Source: Obrimoposthia wandeli (lineage: Eukaryota). From it: 64,000 bases of DNA. Below, piece by piece: positions 1,571 to 12,879 of this stretch (positions are counted from its first letter, which is position 1; each line of letters opens with the position of its first letter). The translations under genes and the position numbers were made by a program. The stretch covers positions 186,001 through 250,000 of the forward strand of contig CDROCS010001089.1 of NCBI GenBank assembly GCA_977020255.1, in the 5' to 3' direction. A model generated the notes under the pieces. The model ran no database searches and had not been told where the DNA came from. It saw nothing but the letters and a program-made list of their open reading frames with translations.

Positions 1571-2488
1571 ATGTACGTTTACCAGCGCTTTAATTTTAAA
1601 CGTATTGCCTGGGCGCAGCATTGTGGCCACGCCAAAAGCTGATGAATTAAGCGGTTCTAATAGCACAAATGGTGACGCCCGATCAGCGCGAACAATGCAA
1701 AGCGGCAAAAAAGGCAACAAGCGCCACTGCATTTGCCAGGCCACACTATAATGCATTAGTGGATTTAATGAAGCAGATTTATTCCAAACCAGGCACTACA
1801 GTGCCCAGAAACAGTGATTTTTAGTTTTAAAATCACAAGGCCATGCGTGGTAGCCTATCTTTTCAATATGGTATTGGCGGGCGCCCGGGGGTTGCTGCCC
1901 ATAAATGGTTAAAAGAGCTATGATCCTAGTCAACCATAAATCACCTTAATAGAGTGAATGAATAAAGAGCTGCTTTGCGCTAGCGCCAGCGCTTTAAAAA
2001 TGCCATTGGGCCCGCGAACAATGCAGCATTTTTATAATGCTCATGAATGGTTCCATGCATTTGATCACTATCTGGCTGATAAAGTATTTAGCGATATTAC
2101 TGAAGTTTCTGCCACTAGCCTGTTTGCCTCTAATGCATGGTTAAGCGATGCCACCCCTATTCCACACTCGCTCAACGATAAACTTTATCAATGTTTTAAA
2201 AGCATCATGCTAAGTGAAGATGGCAAGCAGCCCAGTGCTCTGTTTAAAGCCAGCTCACAAATAGATCGCAAACTTAACAGCAATTATTATGCGAGACCTG
2301 AAGAAATATGCGCCCGCGCCTTTGAAGCTTTTATCGCAGATAGCATTCCTAACAATGCTTTTTTAGTGACAGGTACCATCAACAGCGAGGAAGCTAAACT
2401 AGGGCTTTACCCGCAACGCGAGCAACGCCAATTGATCAATCATGCGTTTAACGATTACTTTAGTTTGCTTGGGCTAGCGCTGGCGTAA
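1571..2488 (+). pseudogene. Frameshifted CLCA_X family / LPD1-like protein
   Basis: ORF 1958-2488 carries AHEWFHAFDHYL and YYARPEEICARAFEAF; the upstream family motif FQYGIGGRPGVAAH (~1861) and HYNALVDLM (~1742) are separated from it by stops and frame breaks; start approximate. Confidence 0.65.
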
Positions 2489-2578: not shown

Positions 2579-4051
2579 TCAACGCACTACTTTATCCAGC
2601 CATTGCTGACGCTCATTCACGCACTCTCCCGCCAACACAAAGCCGAGTAACTGTCCCTGCTCATCAACGAACAAACCACGCATGCCTGACACTCCGTCAC
2701 AATTATAATTAGACTCTATCTGCCAACTTCCTTGTGCGAGCTGTTCAGGTAGTGGTGAAAGCAGTGTTATGGCAAAGGCAGGTGTTTTCACGATAACCGG
2801 CATCAATGGATACTGCGCCATGGTTGGCTTGCCTATTAAGCAATTTGCCAGCGCTTGAATGCTGTGGTTAATCGGCGCTATAAACGGCTGCATTCGCCCT
2901 TGTATTTGCGCGCAATCACCAAGGGCATAAATATCTGCTACATTGGTACGTAAACCACCGTTAACGATAATACCTGAGTCACAATTCACCCCTGCACTGC
3001 TGGCAAGCTCAGTGCGCGCTTTTAGGCCCACTGCGGATAGTACGATATCTGTTTTAAGCTGCAGCCCATCTGCTAATTTTAATAAATACCCTGGTTGCTC
3101 AACTAGTTTCTCGATAGTTTCAACACTATTCGCTAGATGCCAATCAACACCCAATGCGCTCAAACTCTGCTGAAATTGCTGACCAATCTCTTTAGGTAAT
3201 AAGCGATTCATCGCCCAATCGGCTAAACCAATCACTGCCACTTGATAGCCTTTACTGGCTAAGTCGTTAGCAAACTCACAACCTATTAGCCCACTGCCAA
3301 TAATGGTGACATGCGACTTTTTATGATTAAGTTCTACGCTGCTTTGCGTTTTATCAGTTTTATCGAGCAACTGCCTAAAGTGTCGATAATCTTGTAAATC
3401 ATTGACACTAAGCACATCACTGGCACCTGTGCCCTCAAAGCCCAAACGTATCGGTGCTGCTCCTTGTGCCAGCACCAATTTAGCGTATTTCACAACCCCC
3501 ATCGCCGTGTGTACTAAATGCTGCTGTTGATCAATGCTCTGTACTTGGCAGTTTGCGTATATTCGAATGTTAAGGCGCTGCTCTACTTCCATCAGCGTTT
3601 CGATGACTAAATTACCGGCTTCTTTATCACGCGCCAATGCATTGGAAAGTGCTGGTTTAGAATAATGATCACCATTATCAGTACTAAACATAATGATGGG
3701 TTGCTCAGGACTACGCTCACGCAACGCTTTTGCCAAGCCGTATCCTGCAAACCCGGTACCCACAATCACGATGGGTAGTAACTCAGTATTCACTGGATTT
3801 GGGTTTTGAGCTGCTGTTTGTAAAGTAGTTTGATTGGCCGAAGTTTGGTCAACTGACAGCTGCACAGGCTCTACTGCTTCAGTGATTTCCAACATCTCAA
3901 AATCTGCTTTGCCGACCCCGCAATCAGGACACACCCAATCATCAGCAATATCTTCCCAACGAGTGCCCGGCGCAATTCCATCACTAGGCGAGCCTTTAGC
4001 TTCATCGTAAATCCAACCGCAAATAATGCACAACCACTTCTTCATACACAT
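2579..4051 (-). CDS. Rubredoxin / rubredoxin-NAD(P)H reductase fusion
   Basis: N-terminal [11 protein letters not shown]...WVCPDCG rubredoxin, low-complexity linker, then FAD (IVGTGFAGY) and NAD ([11 protein letters not shown]) sites and DIYALGDCA. Confidence 0.88.
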
Positions 4052-4127
4052 CTATTCTCAACAATTATAAACACTGCTCAGTTTTTAGCTTTTTTTATCT
4101 TGTAGCTCGCAACTCGTAGCTTCTAAC

Positions 4128-5651
4128 TTATACCCGAATCGCCACATTTTTAGTTTGCACATAGCTATACAACGCCTCTTGGCCTTTCTCGCGCCCGTAG
4201 CCTGATTGCCCTACTCCGCCGAACGGAGTTTCTATGCCACCGGCATACCATTCATTCACGAATATTTGCCCAGCTTGCAGTGCTCTACTTGCACGCATCG
4301 CACGGCTCAAATCTTTGGTAAATACTCCTGCGACTAAGCCAAAGTCAGTGCCATTAGCCAGTGCCCACGCTTCTTCTTCGCTATCAAAAGCACTGATGGC
4401 CACCACTGGTCCGAATACTTCTTCATTAAATATTGCCATCTGCGCACTCACATCTGCAAACACGGTCGGCTCTACAAAATAGCCTTGCGTCGCGTTCAGC
4501 TGTTGCGTTTGGGGATCAACTAACTGGGTGACCGCTTTGCCACCTGTCACTAAGGTTGCGCCTTCACTGATCGCTTTCTCGCAACAGCTAAGTACGCGTT
4601 GCTGTTGAACGTCACTGGTTAGCGGCGTTAGCTGTGCATTTTGCATACCTGTTCCTGCTTGTAAGCTTTTTGCTAAAGCTGTTACACGCTCAACTACTTG
4701 TGGATAGATATCTCGGTGCACTAAAATACGCGACATCGCCGAGCACACTTGCCCTGCATTAAAGAAGATTCCCCATTGCACACTATCTAGAAACTGTTCT
4801 ATATCAGCATCGGCAAACACCACTGCGGCAGATTTACCACCGAGTTCCATCACACAAGGTACCGCTCTATCGGCTGCTGATTTTAAAATACTTTTTCCGG
4901 TTGCCACTGAACCTGTGAACACAATATGATTTACATCTGGGTGGGCAACTAACGCCGCACCCGCTTCATGTCCGATACCATTGATCATGTTCACGGCGCC
5001 TTTTGGGACACCTGCACGCTGGCAGGCAGTCATCAGCCAGGTCATCGCAAGCGGCGTTAGCTCAGGTGATTTAATCACTACTGCATTGCCTGCCGCTAAG
5101 GCAGGAGCCAATGAGCGCGCGCAGATATCCACAGGAAAGTTCCAGGGGACTATCTGTGCACAAACACCTAACGGCTCGTAATATGTGAAATCGACATAGT
5201 CTTCACCTAAAGGGATTGAAGTGCCTTCGATCTTATCCGCCATACCTGCATAGTATTCAAAGTAGCGCGCTGCGATTAAAAACTCATCCCTAGCATCGTT
5301 TAACGTTTTACCATTTTCTTGCACCAGCAAAGGCGCTGCTTCATCGGCAATGTTACGAATCTCAATGGCTATTTTTAGCAGTAACTGCGCACGCACCGCA
5401 GGTCTACATTTTGTTAATACGCCTGATTCAACACAGCTTTTAGCAGCCATTACCGCCTTATCCACATCTCTGCTATTTGCACAGCTGATGCTGGCAAATA
5501 CTTGATCCGTTGCAGGATCTTTCACTAGAGTATGTTGTTGTGAATCTTGCCACTGCCCATCAATAAAGTTTAGCCAGTGATTATTCAACGTTCGAGATAC
5601 AGATGAGCTCATAATTGCTTCCGTGTTACATAAGTTAACTTTTAAAGACAT
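4128..5651 (-). CDS. NAD(P)-dependent aldehyde dehydrogenase
   Basis: PWNFP, FTGS, MELGGKS, NAGQVCSA catalytic Cys, EEVFGPV; true start may be MSSSV about 39 nt in. Confidence 0.93.
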   Translation of the reverse strand: MSLKVNLCNTEAIMSSSVSRTLNNHWLNFIDGQWQDSQQHTLVKDPATDQVFASISCANSRDVDKAVMAAKSCVESGVLTKCRPAVRAQLLLKIAIEIRNIADEAAPLLVQENGKTLNDARDEFLIAARYFEYYAGMADKIEGTSIPLGEDYVDFTYYEPLGVCAQIVPWNFPVDICARSLAPALAAGNAVVIKSPELTPLAMTWLMTACQRAGVPKGAVNMINGIGHEAGAALVAHPDVNHIVFTGSVATGKSILKSAADRAVPCVMELGGKSAAVVFADADIEQFLDSVQWGIFFNAGQVCSAMSRILVHRDIYPQVVERVTALAKSLQAGTGMQNAQLTPLTSDVQQQRVLSCCEKAISEGATLVTGGKAVTQLVDPQTQQLNATQGYFVEPTVFADVSAQMAIFNEEVFGPVVAISAFDSEEEAWALANGTDFGLVAGVFTKDLSRAMRASRALQAGQIFVNEWYAGGIETPFGGVGQSGYGREKGQEALYSYVQTKNVAIRV

Positions 5652-5656
5652 CGCTA

Positions 5657-6838
5657 TTACAGTGCATCTCGCGCATATTTGTTAGCCACCCACTGGTGAA
5701 AATGATGTGTGGGCCCATCTAGTACTGGAGAAAAAGCACCTCCTTGATAAGCAGGAGAGTTGCGCCCATTTTGCATGCCTTCTACTGCAAACACATCTTC
5801 ACCAAACACTACTTTCCAACTTTCTAATACTGCAGATCTACAGGCTGCATATTCATCCCCTGTGGCTTCTTTACCCACATAAGCTAATTGCAATTTTTCG
5901 ATAGTTTGATTTTGGCTTTGCGGCATTAATAAAACAGTAAAAACATGATCCGCTTGTACGCCTAACAAAATGTTAGGATATAAAGAGATGTACTCCGCTT
6001 GGCGAATTTTATCCCCAGGCCAAGCACTGAATTGCGGCAGCTTAGTACCTGCGATATCAGACAAATTATAACTGTAGCTCCCCTGGCCCGACATATCATC
6101 ATTAACGATAAGATTGTAATGCTGATCCAGCGGAGAGTAGGTATTCAAGCTTGGATGCACCCAAGGCAAATGATAGGCTTCACAATAATTTTCAACTGCC
6201 AACTTCCAGTTAGACGCAACCGTTAATTCCATACTACTGCCTGTGGCTGGAACGGCTAACTGCTCAAAACCATGCTCACCGGTAAAGGCTTCCCAACGAA
6301 TAACTAGCGGCTGTATATAATCGGCAAAATCATTGGCATCTCCTGACAAATTTATAAACACAATGTCATTCCATACATCTGATCTAACGGCGCGCAGCCC
6401 ATGTTTTTCACACACAAACCCTGCTGCTTTATGTACACCCACGCCACCGATATGCGGCGTTCCTTTTAAGTTGCCATTCAAATCGTAAGTCCATGAATGA
6501 TAAGGGCAACGCACCATGCCTTCTACTTCAGTTTCTTCACGCAGTAAAATCATGCCGCGATGACTACACACATTGTGGAAAACTTTTAGCTCCCCTTCAC
6601 GATTACGCATCACCGCTAACGGTAACCCCATGAAATCGACCGGCTTGGCAAAACCATTTTTAGGCAGTTCGCTGGCGAATAACAAACCCGCCCATGTCGT
6701 ACCTAGTACATGATCTCTTTCATAGCTAAATAACTCGGGATCATTGTAAACAGCATTGGGTAAACCTTGGGCTTGCTCAATGGGCTGACGCACTGCATCT
6801 AACGTCAGCATCGGGATCTGGTGTTGTGGTTTTGTCAT
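5657..6838 (-). CDS. Rieske non-heme iron oxygenase alpha subunit (choline monooxygenase / quaternary-amine oxygenase-like)
   Basis: CSHRG...CPYHSW Rieske motif; NWKLAVENYCEAYHLPWVH mononuclear Fe site; ED...EGMQ. Confidence 0.9.
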   Translation of the reverse strand: MTKPQHQIPMLTLDAVRQPIEQAQGLPNAVYNDPELFSYERDHVLGTTWAGLLFASELPKNGFAKPVDFMGLPLAVMRNREGELKVFHNVCSHRGMILLREETEVEGMVRCPYHSWTYDLNGNLKGTPHIGGVGVHKAAGFVCEKHGLRAVRSDVWNDIVFINLSGDANDFADYIQPLVIRWEAFTGEHGFEQLAVPATGSSMELTVASNWKLAVENYCEAYHLPWVHPSLNTYSPLDQHYNLIVNDDMSGQGSYSYNLSDIAGTKLPQFSAWPGDKIRQAEYISLYPNILLGVQADHVFTVLLMPQSQNQTIEKLQLAYVGKEATGDEYAACRSAVLESWKVVFGEDVFAVEGMQNGRNSPAYQGGAFSPVLDGPTHHFHQWVANKYARDAL

Positions 6839-7021
6839 GGCGAAATCTCAGTTTTTATTATTAGCATGAATAGCACTGGTTATATTCTTAGCTCGGATAT
6901 TGCATGAATGCCGTGAGCATATTGATCTATAAGTGCCTTTTTTAGCCGTATGAAAGGCTTAGGTATTTTGATAGTACAGAGTTAGAAACTCACCTGACAA
7001 ACGACTTTTCAGCGCCAATCT

Positions 7022-7036
7022 ATGAGAAAAACTCAT
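7022..7036. promoter_or_regulatory. Candidate LysR (T-N11-A) operator between the divergent Rieske and M24 genes
   Basis: Inverted repeat ATGAG-AAAAA-CTCAT containing T-N11-A; a LysR gene lies at 8697. Confidence 0.45.
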
Positions 7037-7191: not shown

Positions 7192-8475
7192 ATGGCACAG
7201 AACAGTTTCGTATCTCTATCTAATAATAATCAAAATAATGAAGCGCGTTTTGAGCAGCACAGTAGCCAGCAACCATTGGCTAATCCGGTTAGTAATGAAG
7301 TTCATCAAAGGGCCTGTCAATATCGCTTACAGCGGGTAAAGTCGCAATTGCTCAAAGCTGATTGCGGCGCCATTTTACTCTATGATCCTGTCAACATCCG
7401 CTACTCAACGGATAGCAGTAATATGCAAATTTGGACTTTGCACAACTATGCGCGCTACACCTTAGTTTTCGCTCAAGGCCCTGTTATTCATTGGGAATTT
7501 CACAATTGCGAGCACTTACTTGACAAGAACCAGCAAATCGATGAAATTCGTACAGCCATTAGTTGGAGCTACTTTGGCGCTGGCTCAAGAGTGCAAGAAA
7601 AAGCGCAGCAATGGGCTTGTGAAATCATCGATACCTTAAAACAGCACTTGGGCTCGCAGCTGCGCTTAGCGGTAGACATTGCAGAATTTGAAGGTTTGGC
7701 AATGCTGCAACAGCAAGGTGCGCAGTTAGTCGCTGGGCACAGCATTATGGAACAAGCGCGTAAAATAAAATCAGCAGATGAACTAGCACTCATGCGTTGG
7801 ACGATTGATGTTTGCCAAAAAGGCATTGCGCGAATGCACAGTGAATTGCGCTCAGGCATCAGCGAAAACGAGCTTTGGGCGTGGCTGCATTATGAAAATA
7901 TTCGCCACGGCGGCGAGTGGATAGAAACCCGCCTACTCTCTAGCGGCCCGCGCACTAATCCTTGGATGCAAGAATCGAGTTCGCGCATTATGCAACAGGG
8001 TGAATTGCTCAGTTTTGACACTGATTTAATCGGTCCTTATGGCTACTGCGCCGATATATCAAGAGCTTGGACAGTTGACCATACCCCTGCTACTCCAGAA
8101 CAGCGCAGGTTATACAATCTTGCTTATCAACAAGTGCAAACTAATATGGCGCTGTTAAAAGCGGGCTTGAGCTATCGAGAATTCAGTGAAAATGCATGGA
8201 AAATCCCCACAGAGTTTTATCACAATCGTTACTGCTGCATTAGTCACGGGGTTGGTCTTGCTGATGAAAATCCGGCCATTGCTCATCAAGGAGCTGACTG
8301 GCAAAGCTCTGGATACGACGGGGTATTTGAAGAGAACATGGTGGTTTGTGTGGAAAGTTATATCGGTGCACGAGGAGGGTGCGAAGGCGTTAAGCTAGAA
8401 CAGCAAGTGTTGATAACTAAAGAAGGTATTATTGAATTATCTAATTACCCTTGGCAGCAAGATTGGCTTGATTAG
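7192..8475 (+). CDS. M24B metallopeptidase-fold protein, DddP (DMSP lyase)-like
   Basis: DPVNIRYSTDSSNMQIW, SFDTDLIGPYGYCADISR, RYCCISHGVGLADE, CVESYIG, VKLEQQ mirror DddP metal ligands. Confidence 0.75.
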   Translation: MAQNSFVSLSNNNQNNEARFEQHSSQQPLANPVSNEVHQRACQYRLQRVKSQLLKADCGAILLYDPVNIRYSTDSSNMQIWTLHNYARYTLVFAQGPVIHWEFHNCEHLLDKNQQIDEIRTAISWSYFGAGSRVQEKAQQWACEIIDTLKQHLGSQLRLAVDIAEFEGLAMLQQQGAQLVAGHSIMEQARKIKSADELALMRWTIDVCQKGIARMHSELRSGISENELWAWLHYENIRHGGEWIETRLLSSGPRTNPWMQESSSRIMQQGELLSFDTDLIGPYGYCADISRAWTVDHTPATPEQRRLYNLAYQQVQTNMALLKAGLSYREFSENAWKIPTEFYHNRYCCISHGVGLADENPAIAHQGADWQSSGYDGVFEENMVVCVESYIGARGGCEGVKLEQQVLITKEGIIELSNYPWQQDWLD

Positions 8476-8696: not shown

Positions 8697-9593
8697 ATGC
8701 TGATCAAACCACTACCACCACTTAACAGCCTTGTCGCGTTTGCCGCTGCCGCTAGGCACTTAAGCTTTACCAGAGCCTCACTAGATTTGCATGTCACTCA
8801 AGGGGCTGTGAGCAGGCAAGTTCGGCACTTAGAAGATTATCTTGGCCAGGCGTTATTTGTCCGTGATAAACGCGCGTTAACACTCACGTCTACCGGGGTT
8901 GAATACTACAGTAGTATTCAACAATCATTACAGATGATCGCGGCGGCAACGGGCGATATCTTACAACAGGAGAGTGACAAGCAAGTCACCATTATTACTT
9001 CCAATGCGATGGCTTCGTTTTGGTTACTGCCGCGTATTAGCGAATTTCAAGAATTACATCCGGATGTCGATTTACGCATTTTAGCCGTTGATTCAGTTGA
9101 TAGTGTCAGTAGCAGTCGTTTCGATATTGCTTTATTTTACTGTACAACTCCACCGCAAGGCCTAGAGGCATCGCCGTTATTTAGCGAAAAAGTGTTCCCC
9201 GTTTGCAGCCCTGCTTACCTTGAAAAAATCCCACCATTAAATGGCCCTAGTGATTTAACCAAGGCAACGCTTTTGGCATTAGAAGTGAATGAAGAATGGG
9301 TCAACTGGCAAGATTTATTTCGTGAATGTTCGATTAACTATTCGCACGACGCTTATCGATGGATCAATATAAACAATTACCCTTTAGTTATTCAAGCGGC
9401 CCTTAATGGCCAAGGCTTAGCCCTTGCTTGGGAGAACTTAGTGGATGATTATATCGCCAGCGGCTTACTGGTACGCCCAATAAGCACTACCTTGGTGACT
9501 CGATCACAGTTTTATATGTTACAGCCACCTAAGCCTTTGTATCCAAAGCAAGGCGTTGCATACTTTAGGCAGTGGCTGTTATCAATTATTTGA
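8697..9593 (+). CDS. LysR family regulator (GcvA-like)
   Basis: LPPLNSLVAFAAAARHLSFTRAS...VTQGAVSRQVRHLE HTH; GQGLALAW. Confidence 0.93.
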   Translation: MLIKPLPPLNSLVAFAAAARHLSFTRASLDLHVTQGAVSRQVRHLEDYLGQALFVRDKRALTLTSTGVEYYSSIQQSLQMIAAATGDILQQESDKQVTIITSNAMASFWLLPRISEFQELHPDVDLRILAVDSVDSVSSSRFDIALFYCTTPPQGLEASPLFSEKVFPVCSPAYLEKIPPLNGPSDLTKATLLALEVNEEWVNWQDLFRECSINYSHDAYRWININNYPLVIQAALNGQGLALAWENLVDDYIASGLLVRPISTTLVTRSQFYMLQPPKPLYPKQGVAYFRQWLLSII

Positions 9594-9864: not shown

Positions 9865-12800
9865 CTATAAGCCCATCAAACTCTCTGCTTCACCTAACAC
9901 CTGATCCATCACTTGCAGAATCATCTCTACATCGTTTTCTTCGATGGTCAGCGGTGGTCTTATTTTTAGAATATTATCCGCAGGCCCTTCTGTGCCCATC
10001 AAGATACGATGCTCGCGCATACGGTTTTTAACGTAGTCAGAAGCGGCGGTAGCAGGTGCTTTGGTCTGCCTATTTTCGACTAGATCTAAGCCAACAAACA
10101 AACCGCAACCACGCACATCACCAATTAAAGGATGATGCTCTTGCAATGCTTTTAAGCCATTTTGCAACTTAGCGCCCATCAGCTTAGCATTTTCCATCAG
10201 GCCTTCATCATCAACAATGTCCAGTACTTCTTTACCAATGCGGCAAGAGAGGTTTGAACCGCCAAAAGTAGAAAAGTACTCAGGTCCTTGCGCAAAGCTC
10301 TTTGCTATTGCCTTAGTTGTCACTAACACACCAATAGGATGACCGTTGCCAATAGGTTTACCCATCACCACGATATCAGGCACTACTTGTTGCTGTTCAA
10401 AGGCAAAGTAGTAATCACCTAAGCGACCCAGTGCTGTTTGCACTTCATCGGCAATACACACACCACCAGCATCACGAATACGCTGATATACGCCTTGTAA
10501 ATAGCCTTTAGGAGGGATAATTTGCCCACCAACACTTGGGAAGGTTTCTGCAATAAAGCCTGCTAATTTACCGCCATGCGCATCAATATTGGCAATAGCG
10601 GTATCCACTAAAGCGGCGTATTTTTCAGCTCTTTGTGGATCATCACTTTGAAAGCTACCGCGATACTCATCGGCTACTTCAACTAGTTGCACCCAATCCG
10701 CTTGGCCTACTCCACCTTTCGCATTGAACTTGTAAGCTGATACATCGATGCAGCCTGTGGTGTTGCCGTGATAACCATGATCTGGAGTGACCATATCTTT
10801 GCCGCCACTATGTGCACGCGCTAAGCGCAAGGCTAGCTCGTTGGCTTCAGTACCTGAGTTAACAAAGAAGCATACTTCTAAGGAGTCAGGCATTTTTGAT
10901 AAGATTTTGTCAGCAAAAGCAGTTTGCGAAGGATGTAAATAACGCGTGTTCGAGTTCATACGCTTTAGCTGATCAGCCGCCACGGCTTGGATACGTGGAT
11001 GGGCGTGGCCTACATGAGGTACATTGTTATAGCTATCTAAATACGGGCGGCCACTTTCATCAAATAAATGATGGCGCCAGCCGCGCAAAAACATCACCGG
11101 ATCAGCATAGGTAAGTTTAAGGTTTTCACCAAACTTCGCTTTACGCTGCGCCAGTACTTGTGCCTTTTGCGTACCGACATATTCAGTCTTATCAGCGGCT
11201 AAATTCATCAATGCTGCAGGGTTAGGGCAAATTGCATTGAAAAGCGCTAACTCATCAGGGTCTACAGCGCCAGGCCAGTTATTACCCACACCTTGTGTGG
11301 TTAGCGCTAATTGGAAATGTAGATGAGGGTTCCAGCCGCCATTGCTATTTAAGTTACCCAATGTGGCAATCACTTGGTTTTTCTCAACTGCTTGGCCAAC
11401 TTTTAAGGGTGCGATTGAATCGCGATCAAGGTGGCCATAAAGAGTGTAAAAAGTGTCTTCTTCATCTGTTTGATGAGACAGAATCACCATCCCGCCATAA
11501 TCTAAATAACTGCTGTGATACTCTGTGAATTCAACCTTACCCGCAAGCGGGCTATGCACTTCGTGACCTGCTGGTGCAAATGCATCAACGCCTAAGTGCA
11601 CGGTACGACGATTACTCGCTTTGTAAGGCCCATTACTAAAGGCAGGATCTGTGTAAGCAAGGCGTGGCTCGTTATAATACCCCAGCCAAATACCTTCTTC
11701 GGGATCGTAGTCTCCGCCTATTTCAGCGGCTTCTTTAGCACTTAAATCAAACGGGTTTTGTGGGCTAGTGCAGTTTTCAACTGACAAACTACGCAGCGGT
11801 GCATTACTTAAATCAGCGCCTAAGATGGGCGCAAAGTTGCCAGATTGTGCAGCTAACCATGTTTGAATACGCGCTGCACTTTCATTTATTTCAAACCCAC
11901 AGACCACTCTTAATCGTATATTGAGCAGTTCTACATTGATGTTGTTTTCTAATAAGAACTTCCAAGCAGGTGCTTGAGAGATAACAATATAAGGATCGTT
12001 CGGGTTATCCAGCGCCATTAGTGTTGAGTTAACAACGCTCACCGCCAAACGCATGCGCAGCAATGGCCACAGCATATCAAGCTCTTGAGTTGTCAAAGGA
12101 TATTGAGCGTGATATCCACGCACAATCGCCTCTAACACTTGCTCAGGGTTTTGTTGATCTAGCACCATATAAGCGGCGCAAATTGCCAAGTTACAAATAC
12201 GTGGGCCAGCACACATATCTCCTAAATCAATCAGGCCAGTTACCCGCGCAGCGGTGGTTAAAGAGCCATCAACAATTAAGTTGTAATCATTCACATCGTT
12301 GTGAATCGCTTGTTGAGGCATCGCTAATAACGCTGGTTTTATCGCTGCGAACTGCTGGCTAATATCATTAATGACTGCCTTTTTTTGTGCATCTTTAATA
12401 ACAGCACTTTCTTTGGCAACCCAATCACCTTGGCACAAATTCCACTTAAAATCGCGCGCTAACGCAGGATGTGTAAAATCGGCCCACGCCTTATCGACAG
12501 CCCCCACAACTTGGCCTATATCTTCAATCAGCGCAGTGCTTTGCGGCTTAAATTTGGCATAGGTTTTGCCTTCAATTTTTTCTAATAGCCACACAACCCG
12601 GGCTTCGCCATCTGGGCCAGTCACTGTAGTGTATAACTCGCCTGCAATGGTATTAATAATGCTAGGGGCTGGAATATCAGGCGCATTAATCGATAGGTGA
12701 GCAAAGGCACGACACTGCAAATCGATAAAGCTAGTTTCACAATCTGCACGCATCACTTTCAATACCGCAGGCTGCTCGCCATTGACTAAGAAATTGAGAT

Positions 12801-12879
12801 CATACTCACCATCTAATTGCGTTAACGTCGCGTCTATTTGCCAAACTTGTTTTAAAATACCAGCCCAAAATGCAGTCAT
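9865..12879 (-). CDS. Three-domain fusion: APH/hydroxylysine-kinase-like + M23 peptidase + class III (PLP) aminotransferase/phospho-lyase
   Basis: IHNDVNDYN and LIDLGD kinase motifs; HLGVD, YGH, PHLH M23 motifs; YNNVPHVGH, ADEVQTALGR, MGKPIGNG class III motifs. Confidence 0.88.
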   Translation of the reverse strand: MTAFWAGILKQVWQIDATLTQLDGEYDLNFLVNGEQPAVLKVMRADCETSFIDLQCRAFAHLSINAPDIPAPSIINTIAGELYTTVTGPDGEARVVWLLEKIEGKTYAKFKPQSTALIEDIGQVVGAVDKAWADFTHPALARDFKWNLCQGDWVAKESAVIKDAQKKAVINDISQQFAAIKPALLAMPQQAIHNDVNDYNLIVDGSLTTAARVTGLIDLGDMCAGPRICNLAICAAYMVLDQQNPEQVLEAIVRGYHAQYPLTTQELDMLWPLLRMRLAVSVVNSTLMALDNPNDPYIVISQAPAWKFLLENNINVELLNIRLRVVCGFEINESAARIQTWLAAQSGNFAPILGADLSNAPLRSLSVENCTSPQNPFDLSAKEAAEIGGDYDPEEGIWLGYYNEPRLAYTDPAFSNGPYKASNRRTVHLGVDAFAPAGHEVHSPLAGKVEFTEYHSSYLDYGGMVILSHQTDEEDTFYTLYGHLDRDSIAPLKVGQAVEKNQVIATLGNLNSNGGWNPHLHFQLALTTQGVGNNWPGAVDPDELALFNAICPNPAALMNLAADKTEYVGTQKAQVLAQRKAKFGENLKLTYADPVMFLRGWRHHLFDESGRPYLDSYNNVPHVGHAHPRIQAVAADQLKRMNSNTRYLHPSQTAFADKILSKMPDSLEVCFFVNSGTEANELALRLARAHSGGKDMVTPDHGYHGNTTGCIDVSAYKFNAKGGVGQADWVQLVEVADEYRGSFQSDDPQRAEKYAALVDTAIANIDAHGGKLAGFIAETFPSVGGQIIPPKGYLQGVYQRIRDAGGVCIADEVQTALGRLGDYYFAFEQQQVVPDIVVMGKPIGNGHPIGVLVTTKAIAKSFAQGPEYFSTFGGSNLSCRIGKEVLDIVDDEGLMENAKLMGAKLQNGLKALQEHHPLIGDVRGCGLFVGLDLVENRQTKAPATAASDYVKNRMREHRILMGTEGPADNILKIRPPLTIEENDVEMILQVMDQVLGEAESLMGL

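What the first reader, a model, noticed from the sequence alone, without database searches (positions are those of the whole stretch)
2579..6838. Rieske oxygenase apparently wired to a rubredoxin-reductase fusion
Seen: the Rieske alpha subunit, ALDH and rubredoxin::reductase fusion are co-oriented; the Rieske-ALDH gap is 5 bp and the ALDH-fusion gap 76 bp. No FNR-type/[2Fe-2S] reductase, ferredoxin or beta subunit, and no AlkB, is present in the window. Known: Rieske oxygenases (CntA/B, GbcA/B, Stc2/4) use flavin/[2Fe-2S] reductases, whereas rubredoxin/RubB chains serve AlkB and flavodiiron proteins. Inference: an undescribed electron-transfer pairing for oxidation or demethylation of a methylated amine/onium compound, with the ALDH removing the aldehyde product. 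This is the strongest candidate in the window for a new metabolic system.
Basis: partly seen in the sequence, partly recalled or inferred. Interest (0 to 1): 0.72.

Follow-up and report, generated by a model that had tools for sequence, protein, structure and literature searches.

The report
Rieske oxygenase operon with rubredoxin-reductase partner
A marine bacterium carries a three-gene operon in which a quaternary-amine-type Rieske oxygenase and an aldehyde dehydrogenase are followed by a single protein that fuses rubredoxin to its NADH reductase. The same arrangement is kept in dozens of other genomes, so this fusion is very probably a so far undescribed electron supplier for this class of oxygenase.

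Summary
On the minus strand lie a Rieske alpha subunit (5657-6838), an ALDH (4128-5651, 5-bp gap) and a rubredoxin::RubB-type reductase fusion (2579-4051, 76-bp gap). I found no FNR-type reductase, ferredoxin, beta subunit or AlkB in the window.

- Of 71 genome loci with enough flank, 50 keep Rieske, then (in all but one or two) the ALDH, then the fusion. They form two well-supported clades spanning Oceanospirillales, Halomonas, Pseudomonas, Acinetobacter, Vibrio, Pseudoalteromonas and Thauera. Two further look-ups added Pseudomonas jessenii and Paraburkholderia.
- The median ALDH-to-fusion gap is about 20 bp.
- One locus has a stand-alone rubredoxin after the Rieske gene. One has Rieske then fusion with no ALDH.
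- Loci without the fusion carry no recurrent conventional reductase.

The oxygenase is a group V (quaternary-ammonium) enzyme. Its best folds are CntA and Stc2, it has a bridging Glu220, and Tyr218 sits at CntA's cation-pi position.

The usual operon also holds a BCCT transporter, a LysR regulator with a conserved operator, a DAO-type flavoenzyme and a small cupin. The window's lineage lacks the BCCT, DAO and cupin genes.

The substrate is unresolved. No paper describing the operon was found. Rubredoxin genes beside Rhodococcus Rieske dioxygenases are a partial precedent. I rate it a new variant of a known kind.

The parts
5657..6838 (-). Rieske non-heme iron oxygenase alpha subunit, 393 aa, group V (quaternary-ammonium type). 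Rieske ligands C91/H93/C111/H114; bridging E220; Fe ligands H223/H228/D348; Y218 at the CntA Y203 cation-pi position.
   Evidence: Pfam; alignment to CntA and Stc2; invariant columns; AF2 model pLDDT 81; best folds CntA Z 33.6 and Stc2 Z 33.3.
4128..5651 (-). NAD(P)-dependent aldehyde dehydrogenase, 507 aa. It starts 5 bp after the Rieske stop. It is nearest to betaine-aldehyde and aminoaldehyde dehydrogenases but below every curated cut-off.
   Evidence: PF00171 512 bits; BADH TIGR01804 430 bits against a cut-off of 669; PDB hits; directly follows the Rieske gene in most loci.
2579..4051 (-). Rubredoxin::rubredoxin-reductase fusion, 490 aa.
   Evidence: Pfam; P. aeruginosa RubB 2V3A 252 bits and Rubredoxin 2 2V3B_B 88 bits; AF2 pLDDT 88, pTM 0.83; Foldseek 2V3A TM 0.94.
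3899..4039 (-). Rubredoxin domain (residues 5-51) with Fe(Cys)4 ligands C8, C11, C41 and C44.
   Evidence: Translation; the four Cys are invariant in 35 homologs.
3776..3886 (-). Flexible Q/T/N/P-rich linker (about residues 56-92) between rubredoxin and reductase.
   Evidence: Residues 59-85 have pLDDT below 50; linker length varies among homologs, whose total length is 453-487 aa.
2582..3775 (-). RubB-type FAD/NADH reductase module with a C-terminal rubredoxin-binding domain. FAD motif G98-x-G100-x-x-G103; NAD motif G252-x-G254-x-x-G257.
6971..7000 (-). Sigma-70-like promoter (TTGTCA, 18 nt, TACTAT) pointing at the Rieske gene. It lies in a block conserved among close relatives.
   Evidence: Pattern scan; alignment of intergenic regions. 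This is a consensus match only.
7022..7036 (.). Palindromic LysR-type box ATGAG-N5-CTCAT (T-N11-A type), just upstream of the promoter-like site.
   Evidence: Single match in the window against 0.04 expected. ATGA-N7-TCAT occurs 93-290 bp upstream of the Rieske start in 41 of 79 loci, nearly all of them fusion-bearing.
7192..8475 (+). Divergent M24-family gene, DddP-like (DMSP-lyase-like), 427 aa. It is a recurrent but not constant neighbour of the operon.
   Evidence: NF043017 DddP 394 bits against a cut-off of 600; 318 bits to R. lacuscaerulensis DddP 4RZY, with the blocks I recall as holding DddP's metal and catalytic residues aligned and kept; present near the operon in about 20 of 80 loci.
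8697..9593 (+). GcvA-like LysR-family regulator, the probable regulator of the operon.
   Evidence: Pfam and NCBIfam; orthologs at 48-70% identity flank the operon in most fusion-bearing loci.

Best explanation
The three genes form one operon for a two-protein Rieske monooxygenase system plus its follow-up dehydrogenase. The fusion takes two electrons from NAD(P)H onto FAD in its RubB-like module. It passes them one at a time to its own tethered rubredoxin domain through the C-terminal rubredoxin-binding domain. The rubredoxin, on a roughly 35-residue flexible linker, then docks on the alpha3 oxygenase and reduces the Rieske [2Fe-2S] cluster. From there the electron crosses the subunit interface via Glu220 to the mononuclear iron (His223, His228, Asp348). 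The oxygenase binds a small cationic onium compound against Tyr218 and other aromatic residues. This compound is most likely a trimethylammonium compound, possibly a dimethylsulfonium one, and in most genomes it is imported by the neighbouring BCCT transporter. The oxygenase hydroxylates a carbon so that an aldehyde is released. The chemistry is either CntA-like (C-N cleavage giving trimethylamine plus an aldehyde) or choline-monooxygenase-like (alcohol carbon to aldehyde). The ALDH then makes the acid. A GcvA-like LysR regulator acting on an ATGA-N7-TCAT box controls the operon. What is shown: gene order, domains, cofactor ligands, fold, and conservation of synteny and operator. What is inferred: the electron path, the aldehyde-forming chemistry and the substrate class.
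For: Domains and ligands are intact. The reductase module is RubB-like and the N-terminal domain matches P. aeruginosa Rubredoxin 2. The triad is in the same order and strand in 50 of 71 assessable loci; two clades have SH-aLRT 98-99 and carry the fusion in 15 of 16 and 34 of 35 members, and there are only 5 state changes on the tree. The median ALDH-stop to fusion-start gap is about 20 bp in 48 loci. Pairwise distances of Rieske, ALDH and reductase are correlated at r = 0.89-0.93, so the genes were inherited as a unit. The same operon occurs in soil Pseudomonas jessenii and in the betaproteobacterium Paraburkholderia saeva. Minimal forms point to the Rieske-rubredoxin link: L073 has a stand-alone 57-aa rubredoxin right after the Rieske gene, and L016 has Rieske then fusion without ALDH. 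A different Rieske oxygenase (VanA_C type) in Thalassomonas sits next to another Rd::RdR fusion. The Rieske enzyme is the only gene product in the operon that needs an external reductant. No FNR/[2Fe-2S] partner is present in the window or recurrent in fusion-less loci. Group V membership and Tyr218 equal to CntA Y203 come together with PMC7948474. The ALDH is the most constant neighbour of the Rieske gene.
Against: There are no biochemical or expression data: no RNA run holds the stretch. Four Rieske clades of the same family work without an adjacent fusion, and L078 keeps Rieske-ALDH-DAO without it, so another reductase can evidently serve. From my own knowledge, rubredoxins usually have more positive midpoint potentials than the Rieske clusters of oxygenases, so the step would be uphill unless the potentials are tuned here. 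More distant relatives (46-49% identity) sit beside DMGO-like or sarcosine-oxidase-like flavoenzymes. That would fit an N-demethylase producing formaldehyde better than an aldehyde-releasing enzyme. A single Tyr is a thin basis for predicting regiochemistry.
Confidence: 0.62

Rival explanations
1. The electron chain is the same, but the oxygenase is an N-demethylase of the GbcA/Stc2 kind. It would remove a methyl group from a betaine as formaldehyde. The DAO-type or sarcosine-oxidase-type flavoenzymes found in most relatives would continue the demethylation or deamination, and the ALDH would act on an aldehyde made later in the pathway rather than by the Rieske enzyme.
For: The best sequence hits in the PDB are the stachydrine demethylase Stc2 and a second entry (4QUP) with an essentially identical alignment (103 bits). 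A DAO-family gene follows the fusion in most loci. SoxBDAG-like genes follow the Rieske gene in L007, L018, L019 and L028. A 46%-identical relative is followed by a DAO-FAO_M-GCV_T protein with dimethylglycine-oxidase architecture.
Against: The window's lineage keeps Rieske, ALDH and fusion but has no DAO, cupin or Sox gene anywhere in 64 kb. The Rieske-ALDH pair is the most conserved pair, with a gap of a few bases. Tyr218 occupies the position that is aromatic in the C-hydroxylating group Va enzymes and is Asn in Stc2 (PMC7948474). The GbcA equivalog model scores 123 bits against a cut-off of 670.
Confidence: 0.2
2. The fusion is not the oxygenase's partner. It would be a general NADH:rubredoxin module that merely travels with the operon, serving for example an alkane hydroxylase, a flavodiiron protein or oxidative-stress defence. 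The Rieske enzyme would be reduced by a reductase encoded elsewhere.
For: Rd::RdR fusions with two rubredoxin domains occur in contexts without any Rieske gene, next to ALDH and acyl-CoA dehydrogenase genes. Several clades of this Rieske family have no adjacent reductase at all.
Against: The fusion lies immediately downstream, on the same strand, and is co-inherited with the Rieske gene across Gamma- and Betaproteobacteria. No AlkB or flavodiiron gene lies in the window, and none was seen among the flanking genes that were scanned with Pfam or listed in the fetched loci. A stand-alone rubredoxin follows the Rieske gene in L073. An unrelated Rieske oxygenase is also paired with such a fusion.
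Confidence: 0.08
3. The window's copy is a decaying remnant of the five-gene operon and is no longer functional. It has lost the BCCT, DAO and cupin genes and has an LPD1/CLCA_X gene inserted downstream.
For: DAO, cupin and BCCT are absent from the whole window. The closest full relative, L001, has all of them.
Against: All three ORFs are intact with every cofactor ligand conserved. The same three-gene form with M24 and LysR recurs in related metagenome contigs at 85-96% protein identity, so it is a stable lineage form. The promoter block and LysR box are conserved.
Confidence: 0.07

Closest known systems
Carnitine monooxygenase CntA/CntB (Acinetobacter baumannii; PDB 6Y8J and related entries)
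   Same: Alpha3-type group V Rieske oxygenase without a beta subunit. Best structural match (Z 33.6). It shares the bridging glutamate, the Fe triad and the cation-pi tyrosine position. In Acinetobacter it lies in a catabolic cluster with a BCCT transporter, a LysR regulator and an aldehyde dehydrogenase (PMC6562126, PMC11353897).
   Different: Only about 20% identity. CntA's partner CntB is an FMN/[2Fe-2S] FNR-type reductase, whereas here the partner is a rubredoxin::RubB fusion. CntA's Cys206-x-x-Cys209 pair is absent. The polar pocket residue Tyr225 of CntA aligns with an invariant His240 here. The substrate is unknown.
Stachydrine demethylase Stc2 and glycine betaine monooxygenase GbcA/BmoA (group Vb)
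   Same: Best sequence hit in the PDB (Stc2 3VCA, 103 bits). Equal structural score (Z 33.3). Same overall theme of betaine catabolism.
   Different: Stc2 has Asn where this family has Tyr218. The GbcA equivalog model scores far below its cut-off (123 against 670). These enzymes use flavin/[2Fe-2S] reductases and release formaldehyde.
Plant choline monooxygenase plus betaine aldehyde dehydrogenase
   Same: IMG/KEGG auto-annotation calls this family and its relatives 'choline monooxygenase'. A Rieske enzyme is followed by a BADH-like ALDH. According to PMC7948474, CMO is group Va with a tyrosine at the cation-pi position.
   Different: No plant sequence was available to compare, so orthology is untested. 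Plant CMO is reduced by chloroplast ferredoxin. The DAO and cupin genes of the bacterial operon have no counterpart.
Rubredoxin / rubredoxin reductase of Pseudomonas aeruginosa (RubA2/RubB, PDB 2V3A and 2V3B), electron chain of AlkB
   Same: The reductase module matches at 252 bits and TM 0.94. The rubredoxin domain matches at 88 bits. The rubredoxin-binding C-terminal domain is present.
   Different: The two proteins are fused into one chain through a flexible linker. The gene sits in an operon with a soluble Rieske oxygenase, and no AlkB is nearby.
Rhodococcus naphthalene and o-xylene dioxygenase clusters with rubredoxin genes (rub1/rub2 with narAaAb; nidABEF of R. opacus TKN14)
   Same: Rubredoxin genes are associated with a Rieske oxygenase. 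Rubredoxin is reported as needed for activity in TKN14 (as cited in PMC5209329; gene maps in PMC5006600).
   Different: Those are alpha-beta aromatic-ring dioxygenases of Actinobacteria with separate small rubredoxins. There is no fusion to the reductase and no link to quaternary amines.
GR-type ferredoxin reductases of class II/III Rieske dioxygenases (BphA4, TodA)
   Same: Same fold and superfamily as the reductase module (TM about 0.78-0.80). So the system resembles a three-component Rieske chain.
   Different: The carrier is an Fe(Cys)4 rubredoxin instead of a [2Fe-2S] ferredoxin, and it is covalently attached to the reductase.

Membership tests
Rieske non-heme iron oxygenase, alpha subunit | Rieske motif C-x-H ... 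C-x-x-H | tested here: met
   C91-S-H93 and C111-P-Y-H114 are invariant in 15 homologs. PF00355 scores 66.6 bits.
Rieske non-heme iron oxygenase, alpha subunit | 2-His-1-carboxylate mononuclear iron site in a Ring_hydroxyl_A/SRPBCC catalytic domain | tested here: met
   H223, H228 and D348 align with CntA H208, H213 and D323. PF00848 scores 125.7 bits.
Group V (quaternary-ammonium) Rieske oxygenases | Bridging glutamate between the Rieske cluster and the iron site; alpha-only enzyme | tested here: met
   E220 aligns with CntA E205. No beta-subunit gene is in the window. Top folds are CntA and Stc2.
Group Va (CntA, CMO, OxyBAC) as defined in PMC7948474 | Aromatic residue at the CntA Y203 position for the cation-pi contact | tested here: met
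   Y218 is conserved in at least 90% of the family; Stc2 has Asn at this position.
Group V subset with a Cys pair (CntA, Stc2; PMC10952381) | C-x-x-C next to the iron ligands | tested here: not met
   The local sequence is Y218-C219-E220-A221-Y222-H223-L224. The positions of CntA C206 and C209 hold A221 and L224.
Carnitine monooxygenase CntA/CntB | FNR-type FMN/[2Fe-2S] reductase CntB as partner, and close sequence similarity | tested here: not met
   About 20% identity. No such reductase is in the window or recurrent in related loci.
Glycine betaine monooxygenase GbcA | NCBIfam equivalog NF058607 at or above 670 bits | tested here: not met
   It scores 123.4 bits, over the N-terminal half only.
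Plant-type choline monooxygenase | Orthology to characterised CMO; choline to betaine aldehyde activity | not testable with these tools
   Only automatic IMG names are available.
Rubredoxin | Two C-x-x-C pairs binding one iron | tested here: met
   C8, C11, C41 and C44 are invariant. PF00301 scores 74.9 bits.
Rubredoxin-NAD(+) reductase (RubB type) | Two-dinucleotide-fold FAD/NADH reductase with a rubredoxin-binding C-terminal domain | tested here: met
   PF07992 177.9 bits and PF18113 72.3 bits. 2V3A matches at 252 bits and TM 0.94.
NADH:flavorubredoxin reductase NorW | NCBIfam equivalog NF003437 at or above 392 bits | tested here: not met
   It scores 291.9 bits. No flavorubredoxin gene is nearby.
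Betaine-aldehyde dehydrogenase | NCBIfam equivalogs TIGR01804 (669 bits) or PRK13252 (593 bits) | tested here: not met
   It scores 430 and 416 bits. This is the nearest family, but the protein is not a member by the curated cut-offs.
DMSP lyase DddP (for the neighbouring M24 gene) | NCBIfam equivalog NF043017 at or above 600 bits; binuclear metal ligands and the catalytic Asp | tested here: inconclusive
   It scores 393.9 bits, below the cut-off. It matches DddP 4RZY at 318 bits, and the FDTD, HGVG-x-D-E and C-V-E blocks are kept in the alignment. The residue roles are from my recollection of the DddP structure papers and were not re-checked here.

The most novel reading that the evidence does not exclude
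The operon may encode an unknown oxygen-dependent route for an abundant marine onium osmolyte. The most striking version is oxidative C-S or C-N cleavage of DMSP, or of its nitrogen analogue beta-alanine betaine, giving DMS or TMA plus malonate semialdehyde. It would be powered by a rubredoxin chain and would work alongside the recurrent DddP-like lyase. That would be a new source of climate-active DMS or TMA in many marine and soil Proteobacteria.
Probability: 0.08. Interest if true: 0.88.

Novelty: new variant of a known kind. Interest (0 to 1): 0.66.

Why it matters
To my knowledge, the usual classifications of Rieske oxygenase systems sort them by their electron-transfer partners, and those partners are FNR-type or GR-type reductases with [2Fe-2S] or [3Fe-4S] carriers. 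A conserved, fused rubredoxin plus RubB module serving the quaternary-amine group of Rieske enzymes would add a new type of chain. It would also be a compact two-protein system, which is convenient for biocatalysis.

The operon is widespread. It occurs in Oceanospirillales, Halomonas, Pseudomonas, Acinetobacter, Vibrio, Pseudoalteromonas, Thauera and Paraburkholderia. It is tied to BCCT transporters and so to the turnover of osmolytes such as choline, carnitine-type betaines or DMSP. No curated family model or paper that I could find assigns it a function.

Public annotations often start the fusion gene after the rubredoxin domain, which hides the feature. The hypothesis can be tested directly in culturable strains.

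Tried and rejected
- **Literature.** Ten full-text searches combined Rieske, rubredoxin, BCCT, betaine, choline monooxygenase, CntA, trimethylamine, glycolaldehyde, homarine, trigonelline and DMSP. None found a description of this operon. The homarine operon paper (PMC13236597) has no occurrence of 'Rieske', so it is a different system.
- **Expression.** No RNA run holds the stretch.
- **Link to plant CMO.** The exhaustive representative search gave 339 clusters at E <= 1e-30. Names of ten clusters gave only automatic 'choline monooxygenase' labels on metagenome proteins, so relation to plant CMO could not be tested.
- **Substrate from the ALDH.** NCBIfam and PDB ranks are too flat to decide between cationic and acidic aldehydes.
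- **Substrate from the DAO gene of relatives.** No PDB relative at E <= 1e-8. The best NCBIfam hit is L-pipecolate oxidase at 126 bits against a cut-off of 600.
- **Trimethyllysine idea.** It is attractive for this genome, but the operon is autonomous in other genomes and I could not test the idea.
- **Domain docking.** The AF2 model of the fusion shows good domains but gave no usable inter-domain geometry, because coordinates are not exposed.

Full report
**What is in the window**

Three co-oriented minus-strand ORFs occupy 2579-6838.
- The first (5657-6838, 393 aa) has a Rieske [2Fe-2S] domain and the catalytic domain of ring-hydroxylating alpha subunits.
- The second (4128-5651, 507 aa) is a full-length aldehyde dehydrogenase.
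- The third (2579-4051, 490 aa) carries a rubredoxin domain at residues 5-51, a pyridine-nucleotide-disulphide oxidoreductase core at 94-387 and the rubredoxin-binding C-terminal domain at 413-487.

No terminator-like site lies in the 76-bp gap.

A DddP-like M24 gene (7192-8475) and a GcvA-like LysR regulator (8697-9593) lie divergently upstream.

A six-frame motif scan of the whole window found no credible plant-type or Rieske-type ferredoxin, no FNR signature and no second rubredoxin. Pfam on ten ORFs of the size expected for an FNR-type reductase or AlkB found neither.

**The individual proteins**

*The fusion.* The reductase module matches Pseudomonas aeruginosa rubredoxin reductase RubB (2V3A) at 252 bits. 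The N-terminal domain matches its partner Rubredoxin 2 (2V3B chain B) at 88 bits.

The four iron-binding cysteines (C8, C11, C41, C44) and both GxGxxG dinucleotide motifs are invariant in 35 homologs.

An AlphaFold model has pLDDT 88 and pTM 0.83, with a disordered linker at residues 59-85. Its best structural match is RubB (TM 0.94). Next come the GR-type ferredoxin reductases BphA4 and TodA of classical Rieske dioxygenases, and putidaredoxin reductase.

The module is thus a genuine rubredoxin reductase. It is also a cousin of reductases already known to serve Rieske enzymes.

*The oxygenase.* It reaches no curated equivalog; GbcA scores 123 bits against a cut-off of 670. Its closest solved relatives by sequence are stachydrine demethylase Stc2 and carnitine monooxygenase CntA. 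By fold, CntA (Z 33.6) and Stc2 (Z 33.3) are tied at the top.

In the alignment to CntA:
- E220 matches the bridging E205.
- H223, H228 and D348 match the iron ligands H208, H213 and D323.
- Y218 matches Y203.

PMC7948474 shows that Y203 makes the cation-pi contact with the trimethylammonium group, and that an aromatic residue here marks the C-hydroxylating subgroup Va (CntA, plant choline monooxygenase, OxyBAC). Stc2 has Asn there. W341 and F345 align with CntA's pocket residues Y315 and F319. CntA's polar Y225 aligns with an invariant His240. CntA's Cys pair is not present.

**Comparative genomics, the decisive test**

A scan of one genome per species returned 80 loci with relatives at 58-84% identity. 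tblastn with the window's proteins and a maximum-likelihood tree gave the following.
- Of 71 loci with at least 4.5 kb downstream, 50 have the fusion downstream of the Rieske gene on the same strand. In all but one or two of them the ALDH lies between.
- These loci fall into two well-supported clades. The first is Oceanospirillales, including Marinobacterium, with the fusion in 15 of 16 members. The second holds Halomonas, Modicisalibacter, Pseudomonas, Thauera, Vibrio, Pseudoalteromonas, Zobellella, Oceanimonas and Acinetobacter, with the fusion in 34 of 35 members. Thiolinea carries it as well.
- The presence or absence of the fusion changes only five times on the tree.
- The median distance from the ALDH stop to the fusion start is about 20 bp.
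- Pairwise distances of the three proteins correlate at r = 0.89-0.93, so they were inherited together.

Looking from the fusion outward, the same five-gene operon appears in Pseudomonas jessenii and in the betaproteobacterium Paraburkholderia saeva.

Three variants are informative.
- L073 has a stand-alone 57-residue rubredoxin immediately after the Rieske gene.
- L016 has Rieske followed directly by the fusion, with no ALDH.
- In Thalassomonas a different Rieske oxygenase (VanA_C type) sits divergently next to a 547-residue Rd::RdR fusion.

Longer fusions with two rubredoxin domains sit without a Rieske gene, next to ALDH and acyl-CoA dehydrogenase genes. The architecture itself is therefore not exclusive to this operon.

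**Loci without the fusion**

Four clades lack it: SAR92/Porticoccaceae; Leucothrix/Arenicella; a sarcosine-oxidase-linked group; and an uncultured group of 14. They do not carry conventional reductases instead.
- Ten adjacent genes scanned with Pfam were unrelated to electron transfer.
- Motif scans were negative.
- A Pfam scan of 76 ORFs of 280-430 aa within 6 kb in 21 such loci showed no recurrent FAD_binding_6, NAD_binding_1 or Fer2.

These clades do show that another reductase, encoded elsewhere, can serve this family. This tempers the claim that the fusion is obligatory.

**The full operon and its regulation**

In most genomes the unit has two parts. A LysR regulator and a BCCT transporter lie on one side. 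The other side is Rieske, ALDH, fusion, a 440-residue DAO-family flavoprotein and a 117-residue EutQ-like cupin.

The window has no DAO, cupin or BCCT relative anywhere in its 64 kb. Related metagenome contigs at 85-96% protein identity share the trimmed three-gene form, with an LPD1-domain gene downstream. So this is a stable lineage variant, not an assembly accident.

The divergent intergenic region holds a conserved block. It contains a palindrome ATGAG-N5-CTCAT at 7022-7036, which is unique in the window. It also contains a sigma-70-like site at 7000-6971 pointing at the Rieske gene. The looser form ATGA-N7-TCAT lies upstream of the Rieske gene in 41 of 79 loci, nearly all of them fusion-bearing. 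This fits control by the neighbouring LysR protein.

**How it most likely works**

The Rieske oxygenase is the only product of the operon that needs an external reductant. I therefore infer the path NAD(P)H, then FAD, then tethered rubredoxin, then Rieske cluster, then (via Glu220) the mononuclear iron.

Three things argue that the oxygenase releases an aldehyde from a small onium compound: the constant and tight pairing with an ALDH, the group Va tyrosine, and the BCCT transporter. The chemistry could be C-N cleavage as in CntA, or oxidation of an alcohol carbon as in plant choline monooxygenase.

The main alternative chemistry is N-demethylation, as in GbcA or Stc2. It is supported by the flavin amine-oxidase genes that accompany most relatives. 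It is weakened by the window's own lineage, which keeps the ALDH but not the flavoenzyme.

I could not identify the substrate. Candidates are choline or its less methylated relatives, carnitine or gamma-butyrobetaine-type betaines, beta-alanine betaine and DMSP. That would supply trimethylaminobutyraldehyde and gamma-butyrobetaine, but I did not test this link.

**Comparison with what is known, and novelty**

Rubredoxin genes beside Rieske dioxygenases are on record for Rhodococcus (rub1/rub2 with narAaAb; rubredoxin required in R. opacus TKN14, cited in PMC5209329 and PMC5006600).

None of my ten searches found three things: a fused Rd::RdR as the dedicated partner of a group V Rieske oxygenase; this operon; or its regulator box. 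No NCBIfam equivalog covers the oxygenase, the ALDH or the fusion. Public names are generic or automatic, such as 'choline monooxygenase' from IMG. Several NCBI and UniRef records start the fusion after the rubredoxin domain, although the reading frame is open through it.

I rate it a new variant of a known kind. All parts are known families. The wiring and the operon are not described.

**Limits**

- Nothing here is experimental.
- No RNA data exist for the stretch.
- Plant CMO could not be compared.
- From my own knowledge, rubredoxin potentials are usually higher than those of oxygenase Rieske clusters, which is a real mechanistic question for the bench.

Noticed in passing
window 7192-8475 (+): The M24-family protein matches the crystallised DMSP lyase DddP of Ruegeria lacuscaerulensis (4RZY) at 318 bits, roughly 50% identity by eye. 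The blocks that I recall as holding DddP's metal and catalytic residues are aligned and kept, yet it scores below NCBIfam's DddP cut-off (394 against 600). Relatives at 48-76% identity recur next to or near the Rieske operon in about 20 of 80 loci, including Pseudomonas and Oceanimonas. It may be a functional DMSP lyase or act on a related onium compound.
   Followed up: partly
window 9865-12879 (-): A 1004-aa fusion of a phosphotransferase (APH) domain, an M23 peptidase domain and a class III aminotransferase domain (PRK06148, 1432 bits). From my own knowledge this resembles kinase plus phospho-lyase pairs that break down hydroxylysine or amino alcohols to an aldehyde. It is not found in any of the 80 related loci.
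   Followed up: no
window 1958-2488 (+); L090 3038-3805: An LPD1-domain / CLCA_X-family gene sits where the DAO and cupin genes lie in other genomes. The same replacement is seen in a related MAG, so the trimmed operon is a lineage feature.
   Followed up: partly
L085 6437-9644 (Thalassomonas sp. M1454): A different Rieske oxygenase (Rieske plus VanA_C) is divergently adjacent to a 547-aa rubredoxin::reductase fusion. This suggests that such fusions serve more than one Rieske family.
   Followed up: no
L073 4571-4741: A stand-alone 57-residue rubredoxin lies immediately downstream of the Rieske gene in an uncultured gammaproteobacterium, with no reductase gene following on that strand.
   Followed up: partly
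L090 1462-1708; proteins P0121, P0164, P0169, P0175, P0178, P0183: Public gene calls for the fusion often start after the rubredoxin domain (405-431 aa products). The rubredoxin coding part is nevertheless in frame and open upstream; this was checked in L090, and L002 has one continuous reading frame through both domains. The fusion is therefore invisible in those annotations.
   Followed up: yes
L092 1137-4744; unnamed 5.28-Mb contig: Rieske relatives at 46-49% identity have other partners. One is followed by an 809-aa DAO-FAO_M-GCV_T protein with dimethylglycine-oxidase architecture. Another lies among two MR/MLE racemase-like genes, two M24 genes and a 2OG oxygenase. The wider family seems devoted to N-methylated compounds.
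   Followed up: no
L007 12620-17689; L019 7741-12885; L028 2763-7922; L018 4771-9946: In four loci the Rieske gene is followed or preceded by a four-gene set with the sizes and similarity of heterotetrameric sarcosine oxidase (SoxBDAG), in place of the fusion, DAO and cupin.
   Followed up: partly
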